A stretch of 64,000 nucleotides of DNA from Macrostomum lignano (GCA_002269645.1 NIVC01000712.1:434001-498000); one strand, 5' to 3'; shown: positions 11,615 to 45,756, numbered from the stretch's first letter. Translations and numbers: made by a program. Notes: generated by a model not told the origin, from the sequence alone.

Positions 11615-12560
<946 letters not shown>

Positions 12561-15956: not shown

Positions 15957-18900
15957 TCAATTAAATTGACGGTTCTTCTTGTGCCTTCTTCTCACAAAAA
16001 GTAGCGTCGCAGTAAAGATAAGTGCTAACAGAGTCGTAGCAAAAGCTCCAAGCAGAACCATGCTCAGCACACTCATCTCTTCAAGACTGGGACTTAGTCT
16101 CTTCTTAGACTTAGACTTAGTCCCTTCAGTCTGTTCTTCTTCCGCAGCCGGCTGGGCAGCCGCAAGCATCCAGCTGAGCACAGGTTGACTTGAGTTTCCG
16201 CATCTGTTTCCTGCCGCATCCGGGAAGCTGATCAGAGCCGTAAGCTGCTCACTGCAGTCCGTGAAGCTCACCAGCCCGAGTACGTCACCATCAATGGTAA
16301 GATTGACAGCTCTGAGCGAGCCGCAGGAGACTGAGGAGTTCTTAGTCTCGACAACATGGTACCTGGAATTCAAGTGTCAGGAGTTTGTGATTTGTATGTG
16401 ACTTGACTAGCAAGCAAGGTTAACAAAATTTTGAGACTGCTGATTCTCAAGTCAAGAAACTCACAGCTTATCAGCATCCTCGAACTCAGCTATTTTTCAG
16501 CCAGCTTCTGCCCCGCAGTTCAGGTAGAATACCTTCTTGGTCCTGTGCTCATAGAACAGTCCGATGCGAAGCCTCTGAGCGAGATTCAGCGGCTCCTTGC
16601 TGCGGGTGCTCAGGCCGGAGCCGACGCGAGTTCGCTGGCCTGAAGCCGGTGTTCAAGTGGAGTGAAAATTGTGCAAAAGTTAAGGTGTGCGGTCTACAAC
16701 CCAAGGTAAACAGCGATGTTCAGTAAAGGACACTGCATGCGTTCAATAAGCTGGCAACGAAAGCCATTTCTAAGTTACTGCAGGCGTGGAATTTACCGGT
16801 ACATCTCTCGTGCGTTACTGCTCCTATTGTGGGTTTTGCGGCGGTTTAACATAACGGCTTTGTGGGCCTGAAACTTGTGAATATTATTCGATAATAATAT
16901 GAAAACTATCGATATAAAAGTAAGTGCAGGACAACTTTATGTTTCTGATTATAGCGCTATCTGGTATCATGGGCCATATTATTGATGCTGTGTGAAGCAT
17001 GCATATTGCAAAAATTATGTAGCTTAGGCCATAGGAGCTTGGGGTATGAGATGCAACAGCAAATAAAACGACGGTTTGTAACTTGAAAACTTTATTGAAA
17101 TAAGAGCGTATTTGGAAATGCAGTTTTTAATTTGCATTAATTATTATTAATTAATTTGAAAATTCGCCAATTAATTCGGCTTAAATTACCTACAGAGTGT
17201 GATTAAACCTTTTAATCACTGTCTTGTTTATGATTGGTAATCTGGTGAAAAATGTTTTTTTCAGTGGCGAAAAGGAGCATTTTTGAGCAATTGTTCAAAT
17301 TTGATGCATACGCTCGTACACCGCAGCACAATTATCAAGGCAAAACTTCTGGCTACGCATGCATTCTTTCTTTACCTGCGCTGTTACGTTGTAATAAGCT
17401 TTAAATATTGATTTGGTACTGACATGGCGGGTACAAGACCTGAATTTACCAGTTTTCTTAACCCGAAATGTTACTGTACTCTAAAATTTGGTGATAGACT
17501 TCAAGTTGATTCAATGCAAGCTGCACGCCACAGACATTAACCGTAGGAATACCTCAGGGAATTTCTCAGTTAAAATTTCTCAGGGAAAGGCTCATTTGCA
17601 CTCATTCTCAGGAGCCATTAAATTCAATAGCTGATGTGCAATGGAATATAGAATTTTACTTCATTTGATTGCAATTTAGATAAGCTTTTGTAGTGTAATT
17701 TAAGGTGCTATTTCTAAGATGGCTTTGTTTTTATCCCTAATCCATTCCTGACATGCATGTAGTATATTGAGGGAAGTTCACTAACACAGCAGCACTCAGC
17801 CCTGTTTTAAGATATATAGTCTTCATGCACTAGTAATTCGTACATTATTGTTTCATTTCGCTAAGTGTTTTAAAAGCCACCGGTTCACTCCAGCTTACTC
17901 TCTTTGACGAAGTTCTGCAGAGCCGCGGAGCTGTTGAAGCTGGCGAGCCTCATGACTCCGCTGTCAGCGCTCATCGCAGCCAGCTCAGCAGTCAGGTTCC
18001 GACGAACCGATCCTGTGGTGTAGCAGTTGCTCTCAAAATTTGTAATGTTTCTGCAGCAGAATCCCGGCTCCATCAGCCGAATTTGTAGACCCGGGATATT
18101 CGCTGAGCTTCTCCGATTCAGCCGGAATGAGACCGTCAGGTAGCTCCTACAGTTTTTATGTAGAGTGCAGTGGTTGAGTTCAATTACAGAATTATAGATT
18201 TCAGAGAATTGGCCAGCTCTATCGTACCCTTTGGTCAGTTGCAGCACGCGCAGCATCTCCAGTTCCACTGGCTTTGGCTCGCTTGTTGAAGGCGACGAGC
18301 AAGTGGCTGGAAATGCATTGGGATTTTTATTAGCAGGGTGAGAATGAAAGCATTTGGCCGGTTTTATTAAGTACCAGCTAGCATGGGTCAAAAACTACTG
18401 ACTGCTTGTTTACGGTAATGGTTAGAACTGGAAATCGAAACCAATATCACCTGTATGACAGCAAGTTTAACGGTGCTCAAAGCAGCTTACAGTCCGAAGC
18501 CTTCGAGTGCAGTTCGTATCGCATCGGTTGCTGCTGTGCAGCTGAATCCAAAGATCTTGCCCACCTCCGCTGGCTTAAGTGCGCCTCCGTGTCAAAGCCA
18601 GTCAGAACCACAACGGCATTGTCAAGATGGTCAGTCAGAATCTTCCATTTGCAGTTGAGTCCTTCCTCAGGCACAGGGTCCGCGTCAGCTTTCGGAATGA
18701 TTCGATCCTCAATGAACTCGAGTTTTTTGCTGAGCTGGAACTCATTGGTGATGCCACGCGGATAGCAGTACTCGTTGCCTGCAAGAGCTCTGTGGAGAAG
18801 AAGAATGAGGAGGAGTATATTTTTTTGTAAATGGACAGTTAAAAGTTGTCGGAAGGCTCAGCTCACTTAAAATTTGGTCTCTTAAACGTTATTTTCTGAG

Positions 18901-19770
18901 CTATTATTGGCAAAATGGGTTGTTGATTATGCGACTAATTGGCTTTTCGGCCGGTATTTCAGTTATTTCTTGCATACAGATCTGTTAAATAATATTTTAT
19001 ATTTTACGAGTAATAATATATAGAATGTATGATCACAACATACTATTATTATTAGCTACGCCCATGAACATGAAGAAATGCCATCGATTTTGTGACAACA
19101 TTCTAGCTGAAATCAATACGATAAAATAGTTATGTACTTACTATCCTACTGATTGTAAAAAGACAAGAAAATCTTGTGTGAAAAACAAGTGCTGTTTAAC
19201 CCACAGAACTGTTCTGCGGTTTAACCAGCTACAGTTGTTCAATGGTATAATTCAATTAACTTTCGTACAATAATGTACGACATTAACAGCGCCAGCCTCG
19301 CAAGGACAAGTCCCCAAATAACAGCCCCACCAAGGGGCAGTCCCCAAAAAAGACAGCACCAAAAAGGACAGTGCCCCAAGCAGTATGACACCCCAATCAT
19401 TATGATGACCCAATCAGTATGATGACCCAATCAGTATGATGACCCAATCAGTATGATGAGCCAATCAGTATGATGAGCCAATCAGTATGATGACCCAATC
19501 AGTATGATGACCCAATCAGTATGATGACCCAATCAGTATGACGCCCCAATCAGTGACGCCCCAATCAGTGACGCCCCAATCAGTATGACGCACCCAAAGT
19601 GTGGCATCCAAAAGCATTTAAACCACACCAATCAAAAACTTAAATCCGCTACAGAAATCCCCGCTGGTGCAAGAAATTAAGCTTCGCATGACTCACATTT
19701 GAAATGTGGCAGACAGCAGCAGAAGAGTCGACAGTCTTCTGCCTATCACAATCTGCAAATTCAGTCGCAT
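15957..19770 (-). pseudogene. Type-I membrane protein family copy 1, with a nonsense mutation in exon 4
   Basis: Exons 19770-19697, 18789-18491, 18306-17899, 16639-16465 and 16362-15957 have GT-AG junctions with consistent phases (2,1,1,2). TGA at 16499-16497 corresponds to TGC (Cys) in copies 2 and 3. Confidence 0.8.
19381..19595. repeat. 17-bp minisatellite in intron 1 of copy 1 (~12 units)
   Basis: Unit GACCCAATCAGTATGAT. Confidence 0.92.
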
Positions 19771-21282
19771 GTCGCTCACTTCCGGCACCTAAAATTCGCG
19801 ATGAGATGTGGGTGCAGCATGGAGTTTCTGTGTCTGCGCCAGCTTTTACACGTAAGACGTGAAACTGCTAAACAAAGATATTCGTAAATTGCATCAAACT
19901 TCTTGTACGCGTACTATACGAAATTTCTAATTTAGCAATCTGATTTCTGTTTTAGTACCCGGATGTAGTGACACATTTCTTGGCTTTTAGCTCGTGCTCG
20001 TAGTTTATCCAACCCTGCTGCCAAGAAATTTTAGATGCAAAATCGTGTAGATTTAGTTTTTATTTGATTTTATATACAATGAAGCATCTGGCGAGCCAGA
20101 CTCAGCCTTTGCTCTGACTTACCTGAGCATACGAGCGTAATTGCATGTATATTTGAGTGGCTCTAAAGACCTCAATAGCTATAATACTATACATGTGTTG
20201 CAGATTTAGTCATCTTTTCAGATTGAATTTAAAAATAATTTAGCAGTAGAAGTACAATACACACACAACCCCAAAGGACTCGCGAACGAGAATGTCTGTT
20301 AATCGAACGATGGTAGAAAATTCTGTGGTAACACAAAATATTTTGTTAACGATTCTAACTATTTTGCTTCCTATCTTTCCTTAAACAAATATCATTTGAC
20401 AAAAGAGGACACTTTAACATGGCCATCAAATTATGCTCAAATTTCTTAAAAACTATGGTAACTAAATGTGCACGAAACTCAACTCACTGTCCATGTGGAC
20501 TCACTCACCAAGAGATGTTGGCCAACTCCAGCTTCCTGCAGACTTTATGCAAGAAAATTTAAGAAGGGAGCACCACGGAAAACGCATGATTTTACAGGCG
20601 AAGCCGCGGTAACTCTGTGGCAGATCCAAGTAAAATCCAAGTAAAAACCCACGGCTTTTCCGCGGCGAATGTTTCTCTTAAAGCAGTTGGAATTTGCCCC
20701 TCCTTTCAAGTACAACTAAAAGGCAATTCCATGGCTCTCCCATGGAAATTCAGTCAGTAGAATTGTTTAAATAGGGTTGGAGTGTGGGTGTATGCGTGCG
20801 CACAGTTGCCGCCCTATTGTACGAGTACGTAGCATGCCAGGAAAGAGAGACAGAAGAGATCTGTATCGTTCATGCGCTTTCAGACCAAGCATGCACTGTT
20901 CTCTGTACGCCGCCTAACGCTGTACGTTCGTACAAAAAAGAAAACTTCAATTTTTCTGTGAACTTAAGAGTTCTTTATTTATTGTTCAAAGCTCAAGGCC
21001 CAAAGGCAAAGCAGTTAACTGCAGGGAATGATTACAAGCATGTGACATACGTAGGGTCTGGTGGATGTCACTGTCGTCAAAAGTTAAGAGACTAAAATTT
21101 TCTTTAGGGTTTCACAAGGGTCTTCAGAATGTGTTTATGAATTCTTCTTTTAGTTCAGTTCAACAACTGCGAGCAGTGCGAGCTTACGAGCTAAAAGTAC
21201 TGAGGTGCAGAAACAGCATGAGTATTAGTTTCTTCGCTCTCATTTTTTTTCTGGTGGAAAACTTTAGCTAGAACTTTAGGGT

Positions 21283-21825
21283 ATGTTTCACATTCCCCAG
21301 AGTTCACATTCCCCAGATTTCACATTCCCAGAGTTCACATTCCCCAGAGTTCACATTCCCCAGAGTTCACATTCCCCAGATTTCACATTCCCCAGAGTTC
21401 ACATTCCCCAGAGTTCACATTCCCCAGAGTTCACATTCCCCAGATTTTACATTCCCCAGAGTTCACATTCCCCAGAGTTTACATTCCCCAGAGTTCACAT
21501 TCACCAGAATTCCCATTTCCCAGATTTTGCATAACCAGTTTTCACATTCCCCAGATTTCAAATTCCGCAGATTTCAAATTTCCCAGATCAAATTCCGCAG
21601 ATTTCACATTCCCCAGATTTCACATTCCGCAGATTTCAAATTCCGCAGATTTCACATTCCCCAGATTTCACATTCCCCCAGTGTTCACATTCACCAGAAT
21701 TCCCATTCCCCAGATTTTGCATCAACAGATTTCACATTTCCCAGATTTAACATTCCTTGCATTTCACACTCACCATATTTCACATTCCCAAGATTTTACG
21801 TTCCCAAAATTTTACATTCCCCATA
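21283..21825. repeat. Degenerate 15-bp tandem repeat (TTCACATTCCCCAGA)
   Basis: Pure units at the 5' end decay toward the 3' end. Paralogous tracts lie at ~25270, 33163, 38150, 47345 and 53175. Confidence 0.9.
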
Positions 21826-23817
21826 TTTCTCCGGCGTCGCAATAAACAACAATACAGCAGCACAGGGCGCGCCTCTGGGTCAGGTCGCAAAGGAGGGCCA
21901 CGTCGACGACTGAATCCAGGGCGCAGGCGTCAGACAGCAGGCAGGAGACAAGGCGCGAACCCGCGATACGCGGCCTGCCTGCCTGCTTGTGCCAGCTGGA
22001 CGCCACCCTCACCCATGTACGTAGGAAAAACCCAGAGCTATTTTTAGCAACACATCTATAGAGAGCCATCTGCATGTGCAAGTACAAGGGATTCTCTGGC
22101 CTTTGCGGAACGCTCCTTGATTTTTAAACGTTATTAACAGGTTTTTTCCCTATTATCTTCTGCTTCCATGGCAGAAAGACTTCAAACACACCGGCCTCTA
22201 AGGCCCTATTATGAGTGCGAGGCTCACAGCTCAGAATTCGCAGTAATGAACACTTCAAGGCAGTGTATCTTATAATCAACTAAAACTAATCAACTAATGA
22301 ATAGTTTGAGCGGGGTAGGGTTAGCGCTCACGCAGTTTCTCTCTGTGCTGTTTTTATGGCAATTATCAACCCCCGCCTCTCAACACATTTTGCTGCGAGT
22401 CTTCTGTGTCACGCGTTCGCAGGCTGCTGGCTTGGCCCTCAAATCTCAGATTCGTTATTGTCATTTGGGCATTGAGATCGGCTTTCATAAGCTGGTCTGT
22501 TTGAATAGGTTTGATCAAGATGAGTAGAGGTTGTTGTTTTTTCCACTTCGATGCAAGCGCTTTTCCGGTGCTTACAGACAGGTATTAAAAGAATGAAAGA
22601 AACTGCAAATGATAACACGAACAAGTTTTGTAACTTAGATACTTACTGAATGTTATCTTACTTTTTATTTTCTTTCTTTCTAATCTCTTTCCACTTTCTT
22701 ACTAATCTCTTCTTTGATTAAAAAGATCAGGAGCGTGGCCACGGAAGGGCCAAAGGGCGATCCGACCCTCCAAATAGGCTGGCAAAGCTAATGGCTGAGT
22801 ACCTACTGACTTGGCGCCTCTTCAGCAGGTTTGGCGCTTCTTTTCCCAATTCTAGCAGTTCCCCCGACCACCACTTTGGCTACTTTGGCCCCAACAACAG
22901 CCCTTGGTGCTGGCGCCCCTTGGTGCTGACGCCCATTGGCCCAAAAGTACCGGGGTGATAACGGAATGCTTGAGATACCAGCTGAGGATGTCCAGCAGCT
23001 TGCCTACTGGATCTCGCTTGATCATCGAAACTAGATAAATTTGCAACAGCGTGTCTATAGTCACCTGGTGCCACCTGTGGAAGGTCCAGAAGCTCCGCCT
23101 GGGTGAAGCCTAGTGACCAACGAATGCAGAGCTGATGCAGACACATGTGGTCGACGTGCTGATGAAATTTGGAGACTTGGCAAGGCTGCACTGAGGCGAA
23201 GTGCTGATTGGCGCTCAGGGGTGTACTGAATACACTGGCGCTTATGGAAAAAATCAGACCTTCTGGCAGAATCGTCGAATATCTCGACAGTCTGGAGGGC
23301 TTGTGTTAGCCCGTGTTGTTGAATTTCGTATGTCTGCGTTGCTCCAGTACGGCGCAGCAAAAAAATGTCAGGAGGATACCCCCTCTGGGTAGTTATACTG
23401 TTAATTAAGTTCTCGGATTTTTTATCGTTACTTAATTATATTTTCTTCCTCGTTATTGTTTTATTTCCTCTTACAAATGTTTGATCCAGGGATTACATTT
23501 TCGATTGCCTTCTTTCTAGATTACGAGTAGTCTTGAAAGCAGCTCTCTGACTACCTTGATCATCGATCACTTAATCAGAGTGCATAATTCTTGAATAACT
23601 GGATTCTTCAAGTGACATCTTAATCAATTTTGCTTGTTACTGGTAAAATTTAATTTGTAATTCCAATATACGCTTGCAAATTGATACACTTTTATTACAA
23701 AAGTTAATAAATGGTTAGGATACAATAATAGGTTTGTACGTAAATGTGGCTTCGTTCCGAAATTCTCAATGCGTTCGATTATCGGGCCACTACTTCGTTT
23801 TAACTTAGTTACGAGCG

Positions 23818-24806: not shown

Positions 24807-25163
24807 CTAAGGCGCAGCCCCGTTACGATAAAGAAGTTTTTCAGAGCCGGATTGGCGGACCTCCCCAACCTTTCCTCCATTTTGCGAATTTGCCGCTTTA
24901 TATTGGCTGAGCTGCCGTCTCAGTAAAATTAGCTTTGAAGTAGAGATAAATGCCAATAGAGTTGCAGCAGCAGCCAGGAGTAGAACCAAAATCAGCCTCA
25001 ACCTTAAAGGATTGGCACTTGTTTGTTCTTCTTCCGTAGCCGGCTGGGCAGCCGCAAGCATCCAGCTGAGCACAGGTTGGCTCCAGTCTCCGCATCTGTT
25101 TCCGGCCGCATCCGGGAAGCTGATCAGAGCCGGAAGCTGCTCACTGCAGTCCGTGAATCTCAC
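24807..25163 (-). pseudogene. Orphan 3' part of exon 5 of the membrane-protein family
   Basis: Encodes FTDCSEQLPALISFPDAAGNRCG...QPVLSWMLAAAQPA, a TM segment and a tail. Its 5' side is fused directly to the module that precedes the 15-mer repeat, and exons 1-4 are absent. Confidence 0.8.
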
Positions 25164-26731: not shown

Positions 26732-29700
26732 CTAAATGAGAGCTGGTAGGCTTTCAAGCTGTTTTATGTGCGTGCTGTAGCCAGAATGAACCAGAGGTTT
26801 TTGGGCGTCGGATTGGCAGGCCCCCTCAGGCCCTCCTCCCTTTTCAACGGGGCTTGGGACCGTCTTTGGCGAAGCTGCTGCTTCACGTTGAAGGCATTGC
26901 CGTCGACTCACAAAAATTAGCGTTAAAGTAGAGAGAAATAACAATAGAATCAAACCAGCAGCCACAAATTGAACCATAATCAGCCTCATCCGTTCAGGAC
27001 TGGGACTTGTTTGCTCTTCTTCCGCAGCCGGCTGGGCAGCCGCAAGCATCCAGTTGAGCACAGGTTGGCTCGAGTCTCCGCATCTGTTTCTGGCCGCATC
27101 CGGGAAGCTGATCAGAGCCGGAAGCTGCTCACTGCAGTCCGTAAAGCTCACCAGCCCGAGTACCTCACCATCAATGTTAAGATTGACAGCTCTGAGTGAA
27201 CCACAGGAAACTGAGGAGTTCGTACTCTGGACGGTATGGTTTCTGGAATTAAAGTGTAAAGAGTTGTGAAATTTGATTTAATTAGCCAGCCAATTGTTCC
27301 GACAGCAGATAAACTGTTATTCTCAAGTTAAGAAACTCACAGCTTATCAGCATCCTCGAACTCAGCCATTTTGCAGCCTTCTGCCCCGCAGTTCAGGTAG
27401 AAGACTTTCTTGGTCCTGTGCTCATAGAACAGTCCGATGCGAAGCCTCTGTGCAAGACTCAGCGGCTCCTTGCTGCGGGTGCTCAGGCCGGAGCCGACGC
27501 GAGTTCGCTGGCCTGAAGCCGGTGTTCAAGGGGAGTGAAATTGTGCAAAAGTTAAGGTGTGCGGTCTACAACCCAAGGTAAACAGCGATGTTCAGTAAAG
27601 GACACTGCATGCGTTCAATAAGCTGGCGCTGAAAACCATTTCTAAGTTACTGCAGGCGAGGAATTTACATCTCTCGTGCGTACTGCTCCTATTGTGGGTT
27701 TTGCGGCGGTTTAACATAACGGCTTTGTCGGCCTGAAACTTGTGAATATTATTCGATAATAATATGAAAACTATCGATGTAAAAGTAAGTGCAGGACAAC
27801 TTTATGTTTCTGATTATGGCGCTATCTGGTATCATGGGTTATATTATTGATGCTGTGTGAAGCATGCATATTGCAAAAATAATGTAACTTAGGCCATAGG
27901 AGCTTGGGGTATGAGATGCAACAGCAAATAAAACGAAGGTTTGTAACTTGAAAACTTTATTGAAATAAGAGCGTATTTGGAAATGCAGTTTTTAATTTGC
28001 ATTAATTATTATTAATTAATTTGAAAATTCGCCAATTAATTCGGCTTAAATTACCTACAGAGTGTGATTAAACCTTTTAATCACTGTCTTGTTTATGATT
28101 GGTAATCTGGTGAAAAATGTTTTTTTCAGTGGCGAAAAGGAGCATTTTTGAGCAATTGTTCAAATTTGATGCATACGCTCGTACACCGCAGCACAATTAT
28201 CAAGGCAAAACTTCTGGCTACGCATGCATTCTTTCTTTACCTGCGCTGTTACGTTGTAATAAGCTTTAAATATTGATTTAGTACTGACATGGCGGGTACA
28301 AGACCTGAATTTACCAGTTTTCTTGACCCGAAATGTTACTGTACTCTAAAATTTGGTGATAGACTTCAAGTTGATTCAATGCAAGCTGCACGCCACAGAC
28401 ATTAACCGTAGGAATACCTCAGGGAATTTCTCAGTTAAAATTTCTCAGGGAAAGGCTCATTTGCACTCATTCTCAGGAGCCATTAAATTCAATAGCTGAT
28501 GTGCAATGGAATATAGAATTTTACTTCATTTGATTGCAATTTAGATAAGCTTTTGTAGTGTAATTTAAGGTGCTATTTCTAAGATGGCTTTGTTTTTATC
28601 CCTAATCCATTCCTGACATGCATGTAGTATATTGAGGGAAGTTCACTAACACAGCAGCACTCAGCCCTGTTTTAAGATATATAGTCTTCATGCACTAGTA
28701 ATTCGTACATTATTGTTTCATTTCGCTAAGTGTTTGTAAAGCCACCGGCTCACTCCAGCTTACTCTCTTTGACGAAGTTCTGCAGAGCCGCGGAGCTGTT
28801 GAAGCTGGCGAGCCTCATGACTCCGCTGTCAGCGCTCATCGCAGCCAGCTCAGCAGTCAGGTTCCGACGAACCGATCCTGTGGTGTAGCAGTTGCTCTCA
28901 AAATTTGTAATGTTTCTGCAGCAGAATCCCGGCTCCATCAGCCGAATTTGTAGACCCGGGATATTCGCTGAGCTTCTCCGATTCAGCCGGAATGAGACCA
29001 TCAGGTAGCTCCTACAGTTTTTATGTAGAGTGCAGTGGTTGAGTTCAATTACAGAATTATAGATTTCAGAGAATTGGCCAGCTCTATCGTACCCTTTGGT
29101 CAGTTGCAGCACGCGCAGCATCTCCAGCTCCACTGGCTTTGGCTCGCTTGTTGAAGGCGACGAGCAAGTGGCTGGAAATGCATTGGGATTTTTATTAGCA
29201 GGGTGAGAATGAAAGCATTTGGCCGGTTTTATTAAGTACCAGCTAGCATGGGTCAAAAACTACTGACTGCTTGTTTACGGTAATGGTTAGAACTGGAAAT
29301 CGAAACCAATATCACCTGTATGACAGCAAGTTTAACGGTGCTCAAAGCAGCTTACAGTCCGAAGCCTTCGAGTGCAGTTCGTATCGCATCGGTTGCTGCT
29401 GTGCAGCTGAATCCAAAGATCTTGCCCACCTCCGCTGGCTTAAGTGCGCCTCCGTGTCAAAGCCAGTCAGAACCACAACGGCATTGTCAAGATGGTCAGT
29501 CAGAATCTTCCATTTGCAGTTGAGTCCTTCCTCAGGCACAGGGTCCGCGTCAGCTTTCGGAATGATTCGATCCTCAATGAACTCGAGTTTTTTGCTGAGC
29601 TGGAACTCATTGGTGATGCCACGCGGATAGCAGTACTCGTTGCCTGCAAGAGCTCTGTGGATAAGAAGAATGAGGAGGAGTAGATTTTTTGTAAATGGAC

Positions 29701-31650
29701 AGTGAAAAGTTGTCGGAAGGCTCAGCTCACTTAAAATTTGGTCTCTTTAACGTTATTTTCTGAGCTATTATTGGCAAAATGGGTTGTTGATTATGCGACT
29801 AATTGGCTTTTCGGCCGGTATTTCAGTTATTTCTCGCATACCAACCTGTTAAATAATATTTTATATTCTACGAGTAATAATATACAGAATGTATGATCAC
29901 AACATACTATTATTATTAGCTACGCCCATGAACATGAAGAAATGTCATCGATTTTGTGACAACATTCTAGCTGAAATCAATACGATAAAATAGTTGTGTA
30001 CTTACTATCCTACTGATAGTAAAAAGACAAAAAACTTGTGTGAAAAACAAGTGCTGTTTAACCCACCGAACTGTTCTGCGGTTTAACCAGCTACAGTTGT
30101 TCAATGGTATAATTCAATTAACTTTCGTACAATAATGTACGACATTAACAGCGCCAGCCTCGCAAGGACAAGTCCCCAAATAACAGCCCCACCAAGGGGC
30201 AGTCCCCAAAAAAGACAGCACCAAAAAGGACAGTGCCCCAAGCAGTATGACACCCCAATCAGTATGATGACCCAATCATTATGATGACCCAATCAGTATG
30301 ATGACCCAATAAGTATGATGACCCAATCATTATGATGACCCAATCAGTATGATGACCCAATCATTATGATGACCCAATCAGTATGATAACCCAATCAGTA
30401 TGATGACCCAATCAGTATGATGACCCAATCAGTATGATGACCCAATCAGTATGATGACCCAATCAGTATGATGACCCAATCAGTATGATGACCCAATCAG
30501 TATGATGACCCAATCAGTATGATGACCCAATCAGTATGATGACCCAATCAGCATGATGACCCAATCAGTATGATGACCCAATCAGTATGATGACCCAATC
30601 AGTATGATGACCCAATCAGTATGATGACCCAATCAGTATGATGACCCAATCAGTATGATGACCCAATCAGCATGATGACCCAATCAGCATGATGACCCAA
30701 TCAGTATGATGACCCAATCAGTATGATGACCCAATCAGCATGATGACCCAATCAGTATGATGACCCAATCAGTATGATGACCCAATCAGTATGATGACCC
30801 AATCATTATGATGACCCAATCAGTATGATGACCCAATCAGTATGATGACCCAATCAGTATGATGACCCAATCAGTATGATGACCCAATCAGTATGATGAC
30901 CCAATCAGCATGATGACCCAATCAGCATGATGACCCAATCAGTATGATGACCCAATCAGTATGATGACCCAATCAGCATGATGACCCAATCAGTATGATG
31001 ACCCAATCAGCATGATGACCCAATCAGTATGATGACCCAATCAGTATGATGACCCAATCAGTATGATGACCCAATCAGTATGATGACCCAATCAGTATGA
31101 TGACCAAATCAGTGACGCCCAAATCAGTATGATGACCCAATCAGTATGATGACCCAATCGGTATGATGACCCAATCAGTTACGCCCCAATCAGTGACGCC
31201 CCAATCAGTGACGCCCCAATCAGTGACGCCCCAATCAGTATGATGACCCAATCAGTATGATGACCCAATCAGTATGATGACCCAATCAGTATGATGACCC
31301 AATCAGTATGATGACCCAATCAGTGACACCCCAATCAGTATGATGACCCAATCAGTGACACCCCAATCAGTATGATGACCCAATCAGTGACACCCCAATC
31401 AGTATGATGACCCAATCAGTGACACCCCAATCAGTATGATGACCAAATCAGTGACGCCCCAATCAGTATGACGCACCCAAAGTGTGGCATCCAAAAGCAT
31501 CTAATCACACCAATCAAAACCTGAAATCCGCTAGAAATCCCCGCTGGTGCAAGAAATTAAGCTTCGCATCACTCACATTTGAAGTGCAGAAGACAGCAGC
31601 AGAAGAGTCGCCAGGCTTCTGTCTATCACAATCTGCAAATTCAGCCGCAT
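26732..31650 (-). CDS. Type-I membrane protein family copy 2, intact, 487 aa
   Basis: Exons 31650-31577, 29654-29356, 29171-28764, 27512-27341 and 27242-26732 total 1464 nt in an open frame. The protein has a signal peptide (MRLNLQIVIDRSLATLLLLSSALQIALA), a Cys-containing ectodomain, a TM helix (LIMVQFVAAGLILLLFLSTLTLIFV) and an RR stop-transfer. Confidence 0.82.
30242..31477. repeat. 17-bp minisatellite in intron 1 of copy 2 (~70 units)
   Basis: Same GACCCAATCAGTATGAT unit as 19381-19595. Confidence 0.97.
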
Positions 31651-36530: not shown

Positions 36531-36735
36531 TTAGGACTGCGACTTGCTTGTTCTTAGCTCGTATTCTGCAGTTGGCTGGGCAGCCACAAGCATCCAGCTG
36601 AGCACAGGTTGGCTCGAGTTTTCTCTCTTAATTATCATCTCTTGTTGGCTCTTATCATCAATGATAAGATTGACAGTTCTGAGTGAGTCACAGAAGACTG
36701 AGGAGTTTGTACTCAAAGCGGTATGGTTTCTATGG
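36531..36735 (-). pseudogene. Degenerate orphan exon-5 remnant of the membrane-protein family
   Basis: Encodes STNSSVFCDSLRTVNL...SSQPVLSWMLVAAQPTAE, with an internal replacement and no TM segment. Confidence 0.7.
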
Positions 36736-36750
36736 TACGTTTGGTACTTT

Positions 36751-37348: not shown

Positions 37349-39248
37349 CTGCCACAGACTCAACTAAATGTGCACGAAACTTAACTCATTGTCTCTGTGT
37401 ACTAACCAAGAGAAGTTTCTCTGCTTCTTGCAATATTTGCAAATTTTGATGGGGGGTAGCAACCGTGGCAAACGCATGATTTTATTTACAGGTGAAGCTG
37501 CGGTAACTCTGTGGCAAGTCCAAGTGAAACCCACGGCTTTTCCGCGGATTTTTCTTCTGTGAATAAGTCTCCAAGTACTTTTAAAAGGTCATTCCATGGC
37601 TTTTCCATGGAAATTTAGCCGATACAATACAGGAATGCGGATCTATGCCGCCGAGTACTATGCGAGGAAAGAGAAGCAGAAGGACGCACGCTTCTTGTAC
37701 CAAAGCAGTTTCCAAAGCAGCATGCACTGTTCGCTGTACGCCTCCCCCCCCCCCAAAGTCAAGTGCTGTACAAAAAAGGAACTTCAGTTTTGTTCCAAGT
37801 TACTTTAGATTTTTTTGTTGTTATTTTGAAAGGTTGCGAAATAAATGAATACGCAATATATGGTACAGTTCCCACAAAAAGTTCGTAGTTAATAGACTCA
37901 TCTCACGGCTCAAAGCACTCAACTGCAAGGAATAAGATTATAAGCATGTGAAATTACGTCTGAGTCCGGCGGATGTCCCTCTCGTCTAAACTAAGGAATT
38001 AAAAGTTTATTTTTGTAATCTTTCTTTTAGTTTAGTTTCACAACTGCGAGCTCAAGGTACTGTACGTGTGGTGCACAAACAGCATTAATTTCGCTGCTCT
38101 CATTTTGTACCTTAGGCGGACACCTTAAGCTAGAATTTTCGGGCACTGGGTATGTTTCAAATTACCCCATATTTCATATTTTCCAGATTTCACATCCCTG
38201 AATTTTACATTTCTTACATTTTACATTCCCCAAATATTACGTTCCCAAATTCTACATTTCTTTGATTTCCCTGGCTTCGTAAAGAAGCATCAATAAGATT
38301 ACGCTGTCAGATTACTTAGACGGAAGCGGCACAGGGCGCGCCTCTGGACCAGGTCGTGAAGGATTGTCACGTCGCCGACCGAATCCGGTACATTGGCGTG
38401 AGCCAGCAGGCTGCAAACAAGGCGCGAAGCCGCGATACGCGGCCTGCCTGCTTGTGCCAGCTGGACGCCGCCCTCACCCCATGTACGCAGGGGCGAACCC
38501 CAGAGCTATTTTTAGCAACACATCTGTAGAGTACAACTTGGGGATTCTCTGGTCTTTTCTGAAGGCTCCTTGATTTTTAAAACGTTATTAACAAGTTTTT
38601 TTCCTGTTATCTTATTATTGCATCGCTGAAGGACTTCAGCGATGTAATAATAACACACTGGCCTCCAAAAGCCCTATTGAGCGCGAGGCTCACAGCTCAG
38701 AATTCGCAGTACCGAATATTATTCAAAGCAGTGTATCTTATAGTCAACAAGAACGCATAGGCACAATGCAGAAAATGAATATTTTGAGTTGGGTAGAGTT
38801 AGCGCTCCTGCAGTTTCTCTCTGTGCTGTTGTTAAGGCAACCATCAACCCCCGCATTTTGCTGGGAGTCTGTGTCACGCGTTCGTAGGCTGCTAGCTTGG
38901 CCCTCAAATCTCAGCTTCGTTATTGTCCTTTGGGAATTGAGGTCGGCTTTCTTAAGCTGGTCTGTTTGGATAGCTTCATGGTCAAGACGAGTAGAGGTCG
39001 TTGTTTTTCCACTTCGATGCAAGCTCTTTTCACCACCAAGCTCTTTTTCGGTGCTTACAGTTATTAAAAGAATAAAAGAAACTGCAGATGACAAAATAAA
39101 CATATTTTGTAACTTATATACTAATTTTATCTTACCTTCTATTTTCCTTCTATCTAATTTCTTTCCACTTTCTTATCAATCTCTTCTTTGATTAAAAAAG
39201 ATCAGAAGCGTGGCCAGGGAAGGGCCCTCCAAATAGGCTGGCAAAACT

Positions 39249-39997
39249 AAAGCCCCTTGGTGCTGGCGCCCCTTGGTGCTGGCGCCCCTTGGTGCTGGCG
39301 CCCCTTGGTGCTGGCGCCACTTGGTGCTAAAGCCCCTTGGTGCTAAAGCCCCTTGGTGCTAAAGCCCCTTGGTGCTAAAGCCCCTTGGTGCTAAAGCCCC
39401 TTGGTGCTAAAGCCCCTTGGTGCTAAAGCCCCTTGGTGCTAAAGCCCCTTGGTGCTAAAGCCCCTTGGTGCTAAAGCCCCTTGGTGCTAAAGCCCCTTGG
39501 TGCTAAAGCCCCTTGGTGCTAAAGCCCCTTGGTGCTAAAGCCCCTTGGTGCTAAAGCCCCTTGGTGCTAAAGCCCCTTGGTGCTAAAGCCCCTTGGTGCT
39601 AAAGCCCCTTGGTGCTAAAGCTCCTTGGTGCTAAAGCCCCTTGGTGCTAAAGCCCCTTGGTGCTAAAGCCCCTTGGTGCTAAAGCCCCTTGGTGCTAAAG
39701 CCCCTTGGTGCTAAAGCCCCTTGGTGCTAAAGCCCCTTGGTGCTAAAGCCCCTTGGTGCTAAAGCCCCTTGGTGCTAAAGCCCCTTGGTGCTGGCGCCCC
39801 TTGGTGCTGGCGCCCCTTGGTGCTAAAGCCCCTTGGTGCTAAAGCCCCTTGGTGCTAAAGCCCCTTGGTGCTAAAGCCCCTTGGTGCTAAAGCCCCTTGG
39901 TGCTAAAGCCCCTTGGTGCTAAAGCCCCTTGGTGCTAAAGCCCCTTGGTGCTAAAGCCCCTTGGTGCTAAAGCCCCTTGGTGCTAAAGCCCCTTGGT
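39249..39997. repeat. 16-bp minisatellite (~46 units)
   Basis: Unit AAGCCCCTTGGTGCTA with GGCGCCCCTTGGTGCT variants. Confidence 0.97.
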
Positions 39998-41495
39998 CCT
40001 GGCGCCTCTCATTGCAGTCGTCCCTGAAAGGCACAGCCCCAATAAAAAGCCTAAAAGCTGAAAACCCTGATATGATGAACTCCAAACCAGGTCCGGGAAT
40101 TTTAGAACTTGACGATAAAACATTTCCGTCGAATTCTGACTCCCACCCACTGGGTAGAGATGCAGCTTCAAGACACTTTGTACAAAGAAATGAAGCCCGA
40201 ACACTAACTACATCTAGATTTAATACTCTGTTGTCTAAAGAATAAAAAAGGTTAAATTCGCATCATTCTAATAATCCCGTACAGAAATCCGACACACGTG
40301 ACGCTGCAGGTAAACGCAGTTACTTTTACAATGCAGGGACGTTCAGCCAACGTCGTTATTCGTCGGTGCAATGCGCCCATTTGTCGGATTCTATGGGCAC
40401 TCGGTTATGATCTTTTCATAATGAAATGCATTCAATACATTCAATTATTCTTCCCTGTTATTCTACTTACCTTTATTCTTATTCAACTCAGGGATGACTT
40501 ACAGGCAGTTTTTCGATGCCTACTCATCAAGAATATTCTTGAAAGCAGCTCTCTGCCTACCGTAATCACCGATAATTGAGATATTAGATTGCACAATTCT
40601 TGAATTACTGCGTTTCTGCTGGATTGTTCAAATGACAGGTAAATCAGTTTTTTATTATACGCTCGTAAATTCACACTAATTCAGGTACACTTGCATTAAA
40701 ATCATAAATTTTGCAAAATGTTAAGTATACAACTGCTACGAGTAGATTAGTGCGAAACACTCAGTCTCAATGCACTCGTTTATCAGCCACTACTTATTTA
40801 ATTAACTCAGCTAAAATGCATTCTAAACAGTCTACCATCATTTCACACTTCGCTAACGGTAGTGAATAGATAAAGAGGGGTACAAGACAAAACATTGGTA
40901 AATGTGCTTTAGGGAGCAACTTTGGGAAGCAATGAACACCAAATAATGAAATGTACAGAAATTTTACACAAAATAAACATTACAATGCCCGATGCGAGCG
41001 TACGAGCGTATTTGCAGTGCGTTCCATATTTATACAGCAAAGTTATTATTCTGCAACAAAAGCGGCATATTTACAAAGCAATTAACTGTTATATATAGCA
41101 GCATGTTTCTCACTCAGTGGGCTGTGTTGAAGCTCTTCATTGAACTTCTGAAGACTTTCTTTTTGCTGCTCAGGAGGCAATTGAAAGATTTTACTTTTTA
41201 GTTCACAAGTTAACAGCAGCAGCAACATCCCCAAAATACGGTTTTGTTGGATCTTCCGATGAGAAAGTGAAACTTGATTTCGGCTGATCAGACTCAGCTG
41301 TCATGGATAATTCTGTATCTGTTGCTAGCTCTGTTATTGGCTGATCAAGCCAACAAGATTAGCAGGGCAAAATGCGAGCTAAAAGGCTTTCAAGCTGTTT
41401 TTATGTGTGTGTGTTCTACCCTTGGTCAGGTTGCCAGGGAAAGGTGCTGATTATTGCGTCAATCTGTTTGCATGACGCCTAAGACGCTGCCTCCG

Positions 41496-44400
41496 TTACA
41501 CCAGAGGTTTTCCAGAGTCGGATTGGCAGACCTTATCAAACCCTCCTCCTTTTTCAACCGGGCTTGGGACCGTCTTTGGCGGAGTTACTGCTCTATATTG
41601 AAGGCATGGCCGTCTTCTCATAAAAAGTAGCGTCAAAGTAAAGATAAGTGCTAATAGAGTGGTAGCAAAAGCCCCAAGCAGAACCATGCTCAGCACACTC
41701 ATCCCTTCAGGACTGGGATTTAGTCTGTTCTTAGACTTCGAGTTAGTTCCTTCGGTCTGTTCTTCTTCCGCAGCCGGCTGGGCAGCCGCAAGCATCCAGC
41801 TCAGCACAGGTTGGCTTGAGTTTCCGCATCTGTTTCCGGCCGCATCCGGGAAGCTGATCAGAGCCGGAAGCTGCTCACTGCAGCCCCTAAAGCTCACCCG
41901 CCAAAGTACCTCACCACCAGCTCCCAGATTGACAGCTCTGAGCGAGCCGCAAGAGACAAAGGAGTTCGTAGTTTCGACAGCATGGTACCTGGAATTCAAA
42001 TTTCAGGAGTGTGAAGGTATAAACTAATTAGAGAGCCAATTGCTGTGAATGAAAATCAATTTTTGTCAATAGGTTAAGAAACTCACAGCTTATCAGCATC
42101 CTCAAACTCCATCATTTTGCAGCCAGCTTCTGCCGCGCATTTCAGGTAGAAGACCTTCTTGGTCCTGTGCTCATAGAACAGTCCGATGCGAAGCCTCTGA
42201 GCGAGATTCAGCGGCTCCTTGCTGCGGGTGCTCAGGCCGGAGCCGACGCGAGTTCGCTGGCCTGAAGCCGGTGTTCAAGTGGAGTGAAAATTGTGCAAAA
42301 GTTAAGGTGTGCGGTCTACAACCCAAGGTAAACAGCGATGTTCAGTAAAGGACACTGCGCATGATAAGCTGACAACGAAAGCCATTTCTAAGGTATTTCA
42401 TGCGTGGGAAAAGCATCTCTAGTGCGTACTGCTCCTATTGTGGTTTTTGAAATTGTTGAACAATTGTTGAACCATTGTTAAACATAACGGCTGTGCTGGC
42501 CTTAAAATTGTGCATATTGATCGATAAAACATGAAAACTATAGGTGTAGAATTAAAAGGGTACGATAATTTTATGTTTCAATTTTTTGTTGTGCTGTGTA
42601 AATTGTGCTATTTTAATGGTAGCATGTGTCATATTATTGATGATCAAGCATGCACATTGCAAAAATATGCTCGTTAGGGCATAAGACCTTAACGTGGTTT
42701 ACCTCCGATTCGCCGAAGCCTGATTTGCCGATTCTCAGCTCGCCGAATCCCGAGTCGCCGATCGACTTACTAAGTGACTAACTTAAGTAATACTATCTCT
42801 ACTAATAGCTACGCTCGTATTTAAGAAATAGTAGAGTAAATGATGATAAGCAAAAATATACAAAAAGTTTGAACAAAGAAAGGCTATCTGTTAGCTAGCA
42901 CAGGCCACAGGCATTACCAGAGATTCGGCGAGTCGGGAAATCGGCAAGTCGGTATTTGGCAAATGAGGATTTTTTGCATTTGGAACACCGTGAAGTTTTG
43001 CAACTTTTTGCGATACACGTAAGCTGCCAATGGACCTGGCCCGATTAATTTGGCTTTCATTTTTTAGAGTCTTGGCTTTGAACTAGGTAAACTGGCAAAA
43101 AACGTTTTTTCCAGAGGCAAAACTGAGAATTTTTTAGCTATTGTTCAAATCTGATGCATACACCGCAGTACTTTTGACCACTTGTGAAGGCAAACTTTAG
43201 GCTATGCATGCATTCTTACTTTACGCGTGCAAGACTTAAATTTACCAGCATTCTTGACGCAAAATTTCACTGTACTGTAAAAGTTTGTGATAGACATTAA
43301 GTTGTTTCAATGCATAAGCTGTAATGTAACAGTAAAAATACCTCAGGGAATTTCTCAGGCAAAAATTCTCTGGGAAATGCTCATTTGAACACATTCTCAG
43401 GGACCATCAAATTCAATAGCTGATTTGCAATCCAATAAGGTATTTTACTTCATTTGATTGCAATTTAAATAAGCCTTTATAGTGTCATTAAATATGCTAT
43501 TACTGGGATGGCTTATTTATCAATTTCTGGCATAATAGATTTAGGGAATTTTACTAAACACAGCAGTGCTCAGCCCTGTTGTAAGACATAGTCTTTATTA
43601 AATTTTGTTCGGCTAAGACTAAAGAATCAACAAGGTTCACTCAGCTTACTCTCTGTGACGAAGTTCTGCAGAGCCGCGGAGCTGCTGAAGCTGGCGAGCC
43701 TCATGACTCCGCTGTCAGCGCTCATCGCAGCCAGCTCAGCAGTCAGGTTCCGACGAACCGATCCTGTGGTGTAGCAGTTGCTCTCAAAATTAGTCATGCT
43801 TCTGCCGCAGAATCCCGGCTCCATCAGGCGAATTTGTAGACCGGGGATATTCGCAAAGCTTCTTCGATTCAACCGGAATGAAACAGTCAGGTAGCTCCTA
43901 CAGTTTTTATGTAGAGTGCAGTGGTTGAGTTCAATTACAGAATTATGGATTTCAAAGAATTGGTCCAGCATCAGGCCAGCTCTATCGTACCCTTTCGTCA
44001 GTTGCAGCACGCGCAACATCTCCAGCTCCACGGGCTTTGGCTCGCTTGTTGAAGGCGACGAGCAAGTCGCTGGAAATGCATTGGGGTTCGCATTGCCAGG
44101 GTAAGAATCGAAGTGTTTGACTGGTTTTATCGAGTTCCAGCTGGCAGTCAGCAGCGTGGGTAAAACCCACTGACTGCTTGTTCACAGATGCCATTCGACA
44201 ACTGCTTACTTTAATAATAATAATATAATAATTGATTACACCTGCCCAATGGGCAGATGTGCAACCGACAGCTCAGCCGCAGCTATTGCGCGGCGCGTCT
44301 GAAGTCTGCGTACGGCTGTTCAGTCCAAGGACTGGGGGGTCGACACACACCCTCACTTATCCCAGCTAATGCTGGCACCCATTTTACAGCTGGGTGAACT

Positions 44401-45756
44401 GAAGCAATGCAGAGTAAAGTGTCTTGCTCAAGGACACAAATTGTTCCAGTGGAATCAGGAATCGAAACCCCGACCTTCACGTTGTGCGTCCGACGCTCTA
44501 ACCACTAGGCTACAACCCCTAGACCATTACAACTGCCTTGAGTCAGCTATACTAGGCATTTATGCAAAGGCGTGAAGTTTGATTTCATAATCACTATTAT
44601 TATCAACTCTCTTTTCGTTGGCGACCAGACGGCTAAAATTGATGCTCTAAAGGCCTGCTGTCTTCTTCAACAATTAACATTATTGCACAGCTTATAGAAT
44701 ATTCTCTAATTGTGATCAAAGCGCTGCTTACCGTCCGAAGCCTTCGAGTGCAGTTCGTATCGCATCGGTTGTTGCTGTGCAGCTGAATCCACAGATTTTG
44801 TCCGCCTCCACTCGTTTACGCGAGCCTCCGTGTCAAAGCCAGTCAGAACCACAACGGCATTGTCAAGGTGGTCAGTCAGAATCTTCCATTTGCAGCTGAG
44901 GCCTTCCTCAGGTACAAGGTCCGCGTCAGTTTTAGGAATGATTCGATCTTCAATAAACTCGAGTTTTTTGCTGAGCTGGAACTCATTGGTGTTGCCACGC
45001 GGATAGCAGTACTGGTTGCCTGCCAGAGCTCTAAAGAAAAAAGGGCGGGAAAGTAGATTTATTGTAAATGGACACTCAAAAGTTACTGGAAGGCCCACTT
45101 AAGATTTGGTCTACTAAAAACGTTATTTTCTGAGCTATTATTGGCAAAATGTGTTGTTGATTATATGATTAATTGGCGTTTCGGTCGGTACTTCAGTTAT
45201 TTCTCCCATACCGACCTGTAAAAAGAAAACGTTTTATATTTTAATAATGTATAGAATGTATAGTAATATATTATTATCATTAGCTATGCTCTATACGCAT
45301 GTACGTGTAGAAATGCCATCGATTTTGGGGCAACATTCTAGCGGAATTCAATACGATAAAATGGGTGAGTATCTACTTACCATCCTACTGATAAGTAGAA
45401 AGACAAGAAAATATCGCGTGTAGAACAAGTTCTGTTTATCCAGCTACAGCACTATGATATAATCCAATTAACTTTCGTACATTAATGTACATTGACAGCG
45501 CAAGCCTCGCAAGGACAGGTCCCCAAAGAACAATCCCACAGCGGGCAGCCCCACAAAGGACAGCCCCAATTAGTATGGCGCCCCCAGAGTAGCATCCCAA
45601 AACATTCTGCCTACCTTTAAGCAAATGTTAATCCGCAAAAAAATCCCAGTTGGTTTAATGAATGAAGCGTCGCATCACTCACATTTGAAATGTGGCAGAC
45701 AGCAGCAGAAGAGTCGCCAGGCTTCTGCCCATCACTATCTGCAGATTCAGTCGCAT
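41496..45756 (-). CDS. Type-I membrane protein family copy 3, intact, 486 aa
   Basis: Exons 45756-45683, 45030-44732, 44069-43650, 42261-42087 and 41988-41496 total 1461 nt with the same intron phases. Exon 3 has a 4-codon insertion (LMLD region). Confidence 0.82.
42705..42990. mobile_element. Degenerate foldback/MITE-like insert in intron 3 of copy 3 only
   Basis: Inverted blocks TTGCCGATTCTCAGCTCGCCGAATC and GATTCGGCGAGTCGGGAAATCGGCAA; not seen in the matching intron of copies 1 and 2. No TSD identified. Confidence 0.5.

What the first reader, a model, noticed from the sequence alone, without database searches (positions are those of the whole stretch)
15957..45756. Tandem family of unassigned five-exon type-I membrane proteins
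Gene models built by hand from splice sites give ~487-aa proteins with a signal peptide, ~12 Cys, several N-x-S/T sequons, one TM helix and short tails. Intron phases (2,1,1,2) are the same in three copies. Exon 2 (LNCKWKILTDHLDNAVVVLTGFDTE) loosely resembles a CUB-domain start; the rest matches nothing I recognise. Clustered, fast-turnover surface proteins of this kind are typical of invertebrate immune, allorecognition or gamete-recognition loci (inference).
Basis: partly seen in the sequence, partly recalled or inferred. Interest (0 to 1): 0.72.

Follow-up and report, generated by a model that had tools for sequence, protein, structure and literature searches.

The report
Tandem flatworm CUB–lectin-like receptor genes
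This stretch of the flatworm Macrostomum lignano genome carries a tandem array of recently duplicated genes for single-pass surface proteins whose outer part is a degenerate CUB-like domain followed by a very divergent C-type-lectin-like domain. It is a species-restricted offshoot of well-known receptor domain families, not a new kind of protein.

Summary
The repeated gene is real and lies on the minus strand. The window is 100% identical to M. lignano contig NIVC01000712.1. There are three copies (c3, c2, c1), each with a signal peptide, a Cys-rich ectodomain, one TM helix and a short tail. Copy c1 carries an in-frame TGA and a truncated 3' end. Two relics of the last exon also lie in the array.

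The "unassigned" ectodomain can be assigned. A family profile hits almost only C-type lectin-like domains in the PDB. An AlphaFold model (pLDDT 74) matches NKG2D, NKR-P1B and Mincle CTLDs (TM 0.66–0.72) and, more weakly, CUB domains (TM ~0.5). No sugar/Ca2+ motifs are present.

HMMER-visible relatives exist only in M. lignano. Ectodomain dN/dS is 0.26–0.50; the TM and tail region scatters around 1. Copy c1 is a recombinant mosaic.

GenBank's models here are chimeras between neighbouring copies.

The function is not shown. My best guess is a non-classical, Ca2+-independent recognition receptor. This is a new member of a known kind, of modest interest.

The parts
41496..45756 (-). Copy c3. Intact six-exon gene, 455 aa. 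Exons (high-low coordinates): 45756-45683, 45030-44732, 44069-43991, 43897-43650, 42261-42087, 41988-41496 (stop included).
   Evidence: The protein is 91% identical over its full length to P0001. An independent UniProt model, P0009, joins c3 exons 3b, 4 and 5.
26732..31650 (-). Copy c2. Intact six-exon gene, 460 aa. Exons: 31650-31577, 29654-29356, 29171-29093, 29011-28764, 27512-27341, 27242-26732. Intron 1 holds a 17-nt minisatellite at 30085-31480.
   Evidence: The C-terminal half equals the C-terminal half of GenBank protein P0011.
15957..19770 (-). Copy c1, a probable pseudogene. Exons: 19770-19697, 18789-18491, 18306-18228, 18146-17899, 16639-16465, 16362-15957. The 5' part is 97-100% identical to c2. 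From about 16800 down to about 15996 it is closer to c3. Homology to the other copies ends at about 15983.
16497..16499 (-). In-frame TGA in exon 4 of c1 (codon 281), at the position of a Cys codon (TGC) in c2, c3 and the other paralogues.
   Evidence: This column is Cys in 14 of 19 family members.
43898..43990 (-). Mini-intron of c3 (93 nt, in frame, no stop). The equivalents are 18147-18227 in c1 and 29012-29092 in c2 (81 nt each).
   Evidence: It has gt...ag boundaries. It is absent from all transcript-based models and from the distant paralogues.
24807..25163 (-). Relic of the last exon, truncated at its 5' end. It keeps the end of the CTLD, the TM helix and the tail as an open frame, has stop codons just upstream, and abuts a dispersed repeat at 25273-25998.
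36537..36728 (-). Degraded relic of the last exon, 41-47% identical to the paralogues, with an internal deletion. It sits next to a perfect 14-nt minisatellite.

Best explanation
The locus is a head-to-tail array of recently duplicated Macrostomum lignano genes. Each gene encodes a type I membrane glycoprotein built as follows: signal peptide, a degenerate CUB-like beta-sandwich (about residues 28-172), a divergent long-form C-type lectin-like domain (about 173-346), a short helix and a charged stalk, one TM helix, and a cytoplasmic tail of about 40 residues.

Shown:
- the gene structure;
- the domain folds (the CTLD firmly, the CUB weakly);
- restriction to this species in the databases searched;
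- purifying selection on the ectodomain;
- birth-and-death and recombination among the copies.

Inferred:
- The proteins act as cell-surface recognition receptors.
- Their CTLD binds a protein or other non-classical ligand without Ca2+, as NK-receptor-type CTLDs do, because the EPN/QPD and WND motifs are missing.
- The CUB-like domain serves as a second binding module.
- The fast-changing TM and tail set the membrane partners or the trafficking of the protein.

An innate-immune or environmental-sensing role, by analogy with the nematode CLEC proteins that combine CTLD and CUB domains, is the most likely biological context. It is unproven.
For: Source: the window is 100% identical to NIVC01000712.1.

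Gene models:
- Compact one-unit, six-exon, transcript-based models exist for the next copy (P0005) and for a paralogous locus (P0012).
- The GenBank annotation is RNA-seq based (PMC5730564).

CTLD:
- A profile of the C-terminal half of the ectodomain found 27 PDB sequences. 25 of them are CTLDs: CD69 (E = 0.005), DC-SIGN/DC-SIGNR, MRC2, NKG2A and CLEC6A. They align in register from the first Cys.
- The AlphaFold2 model built on 22 family sequences has pLDDT 73.9, and 82-95 in most blocks of this domain (67 and 74 in two).
- Foldseek matched the model to NKG2D (TM 0.72), NKR-P1B (0.69), Mincle (0.68), LOX-1 and DC-SIGNR at probability 1.00.
- Family-wide conserved Cys sit at the C0/C0' and C2/C3 positions, and R[IL]G[LMIV] stands in place of WIGL in 19 of 22 members.

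CUB:
- Foldseek hit the single CUB domains of NRP2, MASP-1, C1r and PCPE-1 (TM 0.5-0.55).
- The Cys pair C33/C71 and the C-x-W motif are conserved.

Selection: ectodomain dN/dS is 0.26-0.50 across 10 pairs.

Topology: one hydrophobic segment followed by RRR.
Against: - No Pfam family, neither Lectin_C nor CUB, is hit even at E <= 10 by any member tested.
- The N-terminal domain profile finds nothing in the PDB sequences.
- The CUB TM-scores are borderline, and generic beta-sandwiches score similarly.
- Foldseek does not report which query residues were aligned, so assigning CUB hits to the N-terminal domain and CTLD hits to the C-terminal domain is my inference from the target lengths.
- The canonical C1-C4 disulfide of CTLDs is absent.
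- Nothing here bears on ligand, tissue or function.
- UniRef's automatic names for homologous members disagree with one another (CUB, ZP, Tub, PAZ, Ricin B and others), so they are not evidence.
Confidence: 0.6

Rival explanations
1. The GenBank models are right. Under this reading, the functional transcripts are hybrids made by splicing exons 1-3b of one copy to exons 4-5 of the next copy downstream. The receptors would then combine parts of neighbouring genes.
For: - P0011 (BOX15_Mlig033233g1) equals exactly c3 exons 1-3b plus c2 exons 4-5, spanning 19,025 bp.
- The next annotated gene starts at the c2 ATG. Its 280-aa product is exactly what c2 exons 1-3b plus c1 exon 4, read up to the c1 TGA, would give.
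- The annotation was built from RNA-seq.
Against: - The neighbouring copy c4 (P0005) and the paralogous locus (P0012) have compact one-unit models with the same six exons.
- P0001 and P0002 match c3 along their full length.
- An independent model, P0009, joins c3 exons 3b, 4 and 5.
- Each copy has its own canonical donor and acceptor at this junction.
- The exon 3b/exon 4 junction is nearly identical among paralogues, which favours assembly or mapping chimeras.
- Copy c1 is a recombinant at the DNA level. Transcripts from recombinant copies in collapsed haplotypes of this redundant assembly would map as such chimeras.
Confidence: 0.1
2. They are classical Ca2+-dependent, sugar-binding C-type lectins that act as pattern-recognition receptors for microbes.
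For: - The fold matches Mincle, DC-SIGNR, the mannose receptor and DEC205.
- Nematode CLEC proteins with CTLD and CUB domains bind bacteria and respond to pathogens (PMC8051790).
- The genes form a tandem, lineage-specific expansion.
Against: - No EPN, QPD or WND motif occurs in the CTLD of any of 22 family members.
- The best sequence matches are to non-lectin NK-type CTLDs such as CD69 and NKG2A.
- No binding data exist.
Confidence: 0.15
3. They are reproductive or self/non-self recognition molecules, for example sperm-egg or mating-partner recognition, or allorecognition, in this hermaphrodite.
For: - The family is species-restricted.
- Variable patches lie at residues 91-110 and 291-325 among otherwise conserved ectodomains.
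- Macrostomum reproduction-related genes are reported to evolve fast (title and abstract of PMC7336406).
Against: - Ectodomain dN/dS is below 0.5 in all 10 pairs.
- The most variable part is the TM and tail, not the ligand-facing domains.
- The gene IDs are absent from the supplements of the reproduction RNA-seq paper that I searched.
- There are no polymorphism data.
Confidence: 0.1
4. The array is a decaying, non-functional set of pseudogenes.
For: - Copy c1 has a nonsense codon and a truncated 3' end.
- Two exon relics lie in the array.
- Copy c5, outside the window, shows apparent 1-nt frame problems.
Against: - Copies c2, c3 and c4 are open across all six exons with canonical splice sites.
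- dN/dS is 0.19-0.62 in both ectodomain domains.
- Conserved Cys and motifs persist down to 20% identity across the wider family.
- Transcript-based models exist.
Confidence: 0.05

Closest known systems
Caenorhabditis elegans CLEC proteins that combine CTLD and CUB domains (CLEC-4, CLEC-41, CLEC-42; PMC8051790)
   Same: They combine C-type lectin-like and CUB domains. They belong to a large lineage-specific expansion (283 clec genes). They are invertebrate proteins with a signal peptide.
   Different: The nematode proteins are predicted to be secreted, carry two or more CTLDs, and are recognised by standard domain models. The flatworm proteins have one CUB-like domain and one CTLD, a TM anchor and a tail, and escape Pfam entirely. 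No sequence-level relationship was detected.
NK-receptor-type CTLDs (CD69, NKG2A/NKG2D, NKR-P1B, LOX-1)
   Same: These are the best sequence-profile matches and the best structural matches (TM 0.66-0.72). Both groups lack Ca2+/sugar motifs. From my own knowledge, the genes of this group lie in a cluster (the NK gene complex).
   Different: These are vertebrate type II membrane proteins (N-terminus inside the cell) without a CUB domain, and they keep the C1-C4 disulfide. The flatworm proteins are type I and lack C1 and C4.
Type I membrane proteins with CUB domains: neuropilins and NETO2
   Same: Both have a signal peptide, an N-terminal CUB domain, a single TM helix and a short tail. They are the top Foldseek hits.
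   Different: Their CUB domains are followed by discoidin/MAM or LDLa domains, not by a CTLD. Their CUB domains have four Cys and often a Ca2+ site. Here only the first Cys pair is conserved.
Single-CTLD type I membrane proteins (layilin, CD302, chondrolectin) and attractin (CUB plus CTLD). These are recalled from my own knowledge and were not tested here.
   Same: They share the type I topology with a CTLD ectodomain. Attractin has both domain types in one chain.
   Different: No detectable sequence similarity was found, and the domain order and number differ. This is a lead only.

Membership tests
[quoted passage not shown] | The CTLD fold: two helices and two antiparallel sheets with a long loop region | tested here: met
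   The AlphaFold2 model has pLDDT 82-95 in most blocks of residues 173-346, dipping to 67 and 74 in two. Foldseek probability is 1.00, with target-normalised TM 0.72 for NKG2D, 0.69 for NKR-P1B and 0.68 for Mincle.
[quoted passage not shown] | Sequence-profile similarity to known CTLDs | tested here: inconclusive
   The family profile against PDB sequences gave 25 CTLDs among 27 hits, but the E-values are only 0.005-0.8 and only the N-terminal ~55 residues align. Pfam Lectin_C is not hit at E <= 10.
[quoted passage not shown] | Conserved cysteines C1-C4 and C2-C3, plus C0-C0' in long-form domains | tested here: inconclusive
   C0/C0' are present in 20 of 20 members and C2/C3 in 17 of 18. C1 is present only in the P0014/P0033 subgroup, and C4 is absent in all.
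[quoted passage not shown] | WIGL motif in strand beta2 | tested here: inconclusive
   R[IL]G[LMIV] stands at the equivalent place in 19 of 22 members. The Trp is replaced by Arg.
Classical Ca2+-dependent carbohydrate-recognition domain (C-type lectin in the strict sense) | EPN or QPD triplet plus WND motif, which bind Ca2+ and sugar | tested here: not met
   None of these motifs occurs in the CTLD region of any of 22 family members.
CUB domain | CUB beta-sandwich fold | tested here: inconclusive
   Foldseek hit the single CUB domains NRP2 CUB1 (TM 0.52), MASP-1 CUB2 (0.55) and C1r CUB2 (0.51) at probability 1.00. Unrelated beta-sandwiches score similarly. The model has low-confidence loops at 97-110 and 121-130.
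CUB domain | Four conserved Cys (two disulfides) and a match to the Pfam or PROSITE model | tested here: not met
   Only the first pair (C33, C71, with the C-x-W motif) is conserved. C127 has no partner. Pfam CUB is not hit. The family profile finds no PDB CUB sequence. UniRef's 'CUB domain-containing' label is automatic and is inconsistent among homologues.
Type I single-pass membrane protein | N-terminal signal peptide, and one C-terminal TM segment with basic residues on the cytoplasmic side | tested here: met
   The hydrophobic N-terminus ends in ALAG. There is one 19-residue window with Kyte-Doolittle score above 1.6, at 375-416, followed by RRR. The model predicts a helix at 389-414. No dedicated signal-peptide predictor was available.

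The most novel reading that the evidence does not exclude
The two successive chimeric, RNA-seq-derived GenBank models (c3 to c2, and c2 to c1) might reflect real splicing between adjacent tandem genes. Each hybrid receptor would join the CUB-like domain and the first half of the CTLD of one copy to the second half of the CTLD, the TM helix and the tail of the next copy. That would be an RNA-level way of diversifying a recognition-receptor family in a flatworm.
Probability: 0.08. Interest if true: 0.7.

Novelty: new member of a known kind. Interest (0 to 1): 0.3.

Why it matters
The finding assigns a fold and an architecture to a group of M. lignano 'hypothetical proteins' that standard domain searches miss. 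At least ten close paralogues lie on five contigs, and at least a dozen more divergent 50%-identity clusters exist.

It also shows that the deposited gene models at this locus are chimeras of neighbouring copies. That matters for anyone using this model flatworm for knock-down, transgenesis or expression work.

Biologically, it adds a membrane-anchored CUB-plus-CTLD family to the lineage-specific, tandemly expanding CTLD families of invertebrates, which are candidates for immune or environmental recognition.

It does not reveal a new kind of molecule or mechanism.

Tried and rejected
- **Pfam.** Scans of single exons, the full protein and ten distant paralogues gave nothing relevant.
- **phmmer against PDB.** The full protein gave nothing.
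- **N-terminal domain profile against PDB.** Nothing.
- **First AlphaFold run.** With nine close paralogues it gave pLDDT 33 and was unusable. It worked only after distant paralogues were added.
- **My spliced window models.** GenBank paralogues (up to 91% identical to c3) were used as stand-ins, so the structure is that of P0001, not of a window copy.
- **My first search for exon 4.** It failed because of the c1 stop codon.
- **The relic at 25163-24807 as an alternative last exon.** Rejected. It has stop codons upstream, and the only nearby acceptor is out of phase.
- **Poly(A) signals downstream of each copy.** Uninformative.
- **Expression data.** The gene IDs appear in no searchable paper text. 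Of four M. lignano papers queried, three had supplements held as text and none of those contains the IDs; the fourth has no supplements held.
- **ITIM-like or YxxPhi reading of the tail motif LQYRAV.** Only some paralogues have it, so I treat it as a lead only.
- **Rfam and tRNA scans of the window.** Empty.
Full report
**What is there**

Shuffled sequence gives none. A self-comparison shows a tandem segmental duplication. Unit c1 (16129-24253) and unit c2 (27009-36141) are 96-98% identical. Unit c3 is 80-87% identical to both.

The closest database proteins are hypothetical proteins of the free-living flatworm Macrostomum lignano. Locus L002, fetched for one of them, is 100% identical to window 16732-55756. 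The window is therefore contig NIVC01000712.1 of assembly Mlig_3_7, positions 434,001-498,000.

**Gene structure**

I placed exon boundaries using the annotated paralogues as guides. All boundaries use gt/ag splice sites.

| Copy | Exon 1 | Exon 2 | Exon 3a | Exon 3b | Exon 4 | Exon 5 |
|---|---|---|---|---|---|---|
| c3 | 45756-45683 | 45030-44732 | 44069-43991 | 43897-43650 | 42261-42087 | 41988-41496 |
| c2 | 31650-31577 | 29654-29356 | 29171-29093 | 29011-28764 | 27512-27341 | 27242-26732 |
| c1 | 19770-19697 | 18789-18491 | 18306-18228 | 18146-17899 | 16639-16465 | 16362-15957 |

  - Every transcript-derived M. lignano model removes it.
  - Paralogues at 20-40% identity have no counterpart to it.
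  - The exact exon maps of P0012 and P0005 show the same six exons.
- The products are 455 aa (c3) and 460 aa (c2).
- They have 12-13 Cys, 2-5 sequons, a hydrophobic N-terminus, and one TM segment followed by RRR.

**State of the copies**

- Copies c3 and c2 are open throughout.
- Copy c1 has TGA at 16499-16497 in place of a conserved Cys codon.
- Copy c1 loses homology at about 15983, which shortens its tail.
- Copy c1 is also a mosaic. It is 97-100% identical to c2 from exon 2 down to about 16900. From about 16800 down to about 15996 it is closer to c3 (0.91-0.98, against 0.66-0.96 for c2).
- Two relics of the last exon lie at 25163-24807 and 36728-36537.
- The array continues outside the window.
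  - Copy c4 is P0005, at window-equivalent 67,053-71,410. It has a compact 4.4-kb model.
  - Copy c5 lies further on and shows apparent 1-nt frame problems. These could be errors of the long-read assembly.

**Conflict with the public annotation**

- GenBank protein P0011 (BOX15_Mlig033233g1) equals exactly c3 exons 1-3b plus c2 exons 4-5, a gene span of 19,025 bp.
- The next annotated gene starts at the ATG of c2. Its 280-aa product is exactly what c2 exons 1-3b plus c1 exon 4, read up to the c1 TGA, would give.
- The annotation was built from StringTie/TACO assemblies and from BLAT-mapped de novo transcripts, on an assembly with much redundancy (PMC5730564).
- One-unit models exist next door (P0005), at a paralogous locus (P0012, contig NIVC01002507.1) and in an independent annotation (P0009).
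- Recombinant copies also demonstrably exist, since c1 is one.

I therefore judge the chimeras most likely to be mapping or assembly products, or transcripts of unassembled recombinant copies. Real inter-gene splicing is not excluded.

**What the protein is**

Pfam finds nothing for the window proteins or for ten distant paralogues. phmmer against PDB sequences also finds nothing.

A profile search of 1.84 billion representative proteins found 22 hits. One is a spurious bacterial repeat protein. Every hit whose source I looked up is from M. lignano, and identities go down to about 20%.

The wider family conserves the pattern:

    AG.HYC ... C.W ... PG.C.RDML.F.G.CY.VS....LT.A...G.AQLASFSS..E...F ... 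PLNL.Q..RIGLF ... C.L ... CG.L ... VEF..C...LPALISFP

. I recognised this pattern as CTLD-like, and then tested the idea in two ways.

1. *Profile against the PDB.* A profile of this region retrieved 27 sequences. 25 of them are CTLDs: CD69 (E = 0.005), DC-SIGN/DC-SIGNR, MRC2, NKG2A and CLEC6A. They align in register from the first Cys through helix alpha2.
2. *Structure prediction.* AlphaFold2 failed on nine close paralogues, with pLDDT 33. With 22 family members it gave pLDDT 73.9 and pTM 0.67, and 82-95 in most blocks of residues 173-346. Foldseek against the PDB returned two kinds of hit:
   - CTLDs: NKG2D (TM 0.72), NKR-P1B (0.69), Mincle (0.68), LOX-1, DC-SIGNR, the mannose receptor, DEC205 and the snake-venom CTLD proteins ZK002 and EMS16.
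   - CUB domains: neuropilin a1/a2, MASP-1 CUB2 (0.55), C1r CUB2 (0.51), PCPE-1, NETO2 and GPR126.

The CTLD call is solid. The CUB call is fold-level only and weaker.
- Only the first Cys pair (C33, C71) and the C-x-W motif are kept.
- The N-terminal domain profile finds no PDB sequence.
- Generic beta-sandwiches score about the same.

Within the CTLD:
- the C0-C0' and C2-C3 cysteines are family-wide;
- C1 and C4 are missing;
- WIGL is replaced by RIGL;
- no EPN, QPD or WND motif exists.

Ca2+-dependent sugar binding is therefore unlikely.

**Evolution**

I computed Nei-Gojobori dN/dS over ten pairs drawn from c1, c2, c3, P0005 and P0012.

| Region | dN/dS range |
|---|---|
| CUB-like domain | 0.19-0.45 |
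| CTLD | 0.29-0.62 |
| Whole ectodomain | 0.26-0.50 |
| Stalk, TM and tail | 0.41-2.17 |

- Variability among 12 close paralogues peaks in a disordered loop (residues 91-110), in the beta3-beta4 part of the CTLD (residues 291-325), and most of all in the TM and tail.
- The TM and tail come in two sequence types that are shuffled among copies.
- The picture is a young birth-and-death array with recombination and a constrained ectodomain. It is not a hypervariable recognition locus.

**Function**

Nothing here shows function. My committed reading is a cell-surface recognition receptor with a non-classical, Ca2+-independent CTLD and an accessory CUB-like module.

The nearest analogues by architecture are the nematode CLEC proteins that combine CTLD and CUB domains. 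Those proteins are secreted, respond to pathogens and bind bacteria (PMC8051790). I found no expression data for these genes.

**Verdict**

- The gene model needs one extra intron, and one copy is defective.
- The 'unassigned' protein is a very divergent member of known domain families, restricted to this flatworm in current databases.
- Novelty: a new member of a known kind.
- Interest: modest.
- The most useful by-products are the corrected gene models and the flag on the chimeric public annotation.

Noticed in passing
window 3106-11614 (+): A young Ty3/gypsy-type LTR retrotransposon. Its two 559-nt LTRs, at 3106-3664 and 11056-11614, are 100% identical. The ORFs carry gag plus a zinc knuckle, then RT, RNase H and the integrase zinc-binding domain, and then a separate ORF with the integrase C-terminal domain. 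The reading frame is therefore interrupted around the integrase core (8374-8729). I examined it ORF by ORF only and did not extract the element.
   Followed up: partly
window 48319-51193 (-): A P-element/THAP9-like transposase ORF of 776 aa. It has THAP, Tnp_P_element, TNP-like RNase H and GTP-binding insertion domains. An adjacent 186-aa ORF follows it. It lies between array copies c3 and c4.
   Followed up: partly
window 11463-12560; 19223-19675 and 30085-31480; 21263-21690 and 33128-33571; 36608-37350; 39135-40000: Many minisatellites with periods of 8/12, 17, 16, 14 and 16 nt. The 17-nt array sits in intron 1 of c1 and c2 and differs greatly in length between them (about 450 nt against about 1400 nt). 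The 14-nt array is essentially perfect over about 740 nt.
   Followed up: no
window 21730-22432, 25273-25998, 33611-34313, 38155-39226, 47384-47968, 51486-52182, 53154-54218: A dispersed repeat of about 0.7-1 kb, at 75-85% identity, occurs at least seven times between the gene copies. One copy abuts the truncated last-exon relic at 25163.
   Followed up: no
window 54700-64000: A separate block of nested direct repeats with spacings of about 1.3-2.8 kb at 75-85% identity. It has strong strand asymmetry: GC skew is +0.5 at 62-64 kb. The last kilobase is a low-complexity Ser/Leu/Pro-rich ORF on the minus strand. I did not characterise it.
   Followed up: no
L003 1060-4800 and 10001-14358 (window-equivalent about 76.6-80.4 kb and 67.1-71.4 kb, outside the window): Two further tandem copies of the same gene lie on the same contig. 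Copy c4 is P0005 and is intact, with a small extra 3' exon whose junction I could not place. Copy c5 has an apparent 1-nt deletion at the exon 3b donor and a frameshift in the tail.
   Followed up: partly
proteins P0013 (843 aa) and P0019 (696 aa), at other M. lignano loci: These database models string together several CTLD-TM units or fragments of this family. Fused or chimeric annotation of tandem copies therefore seems common for this family.
   Followed up: no
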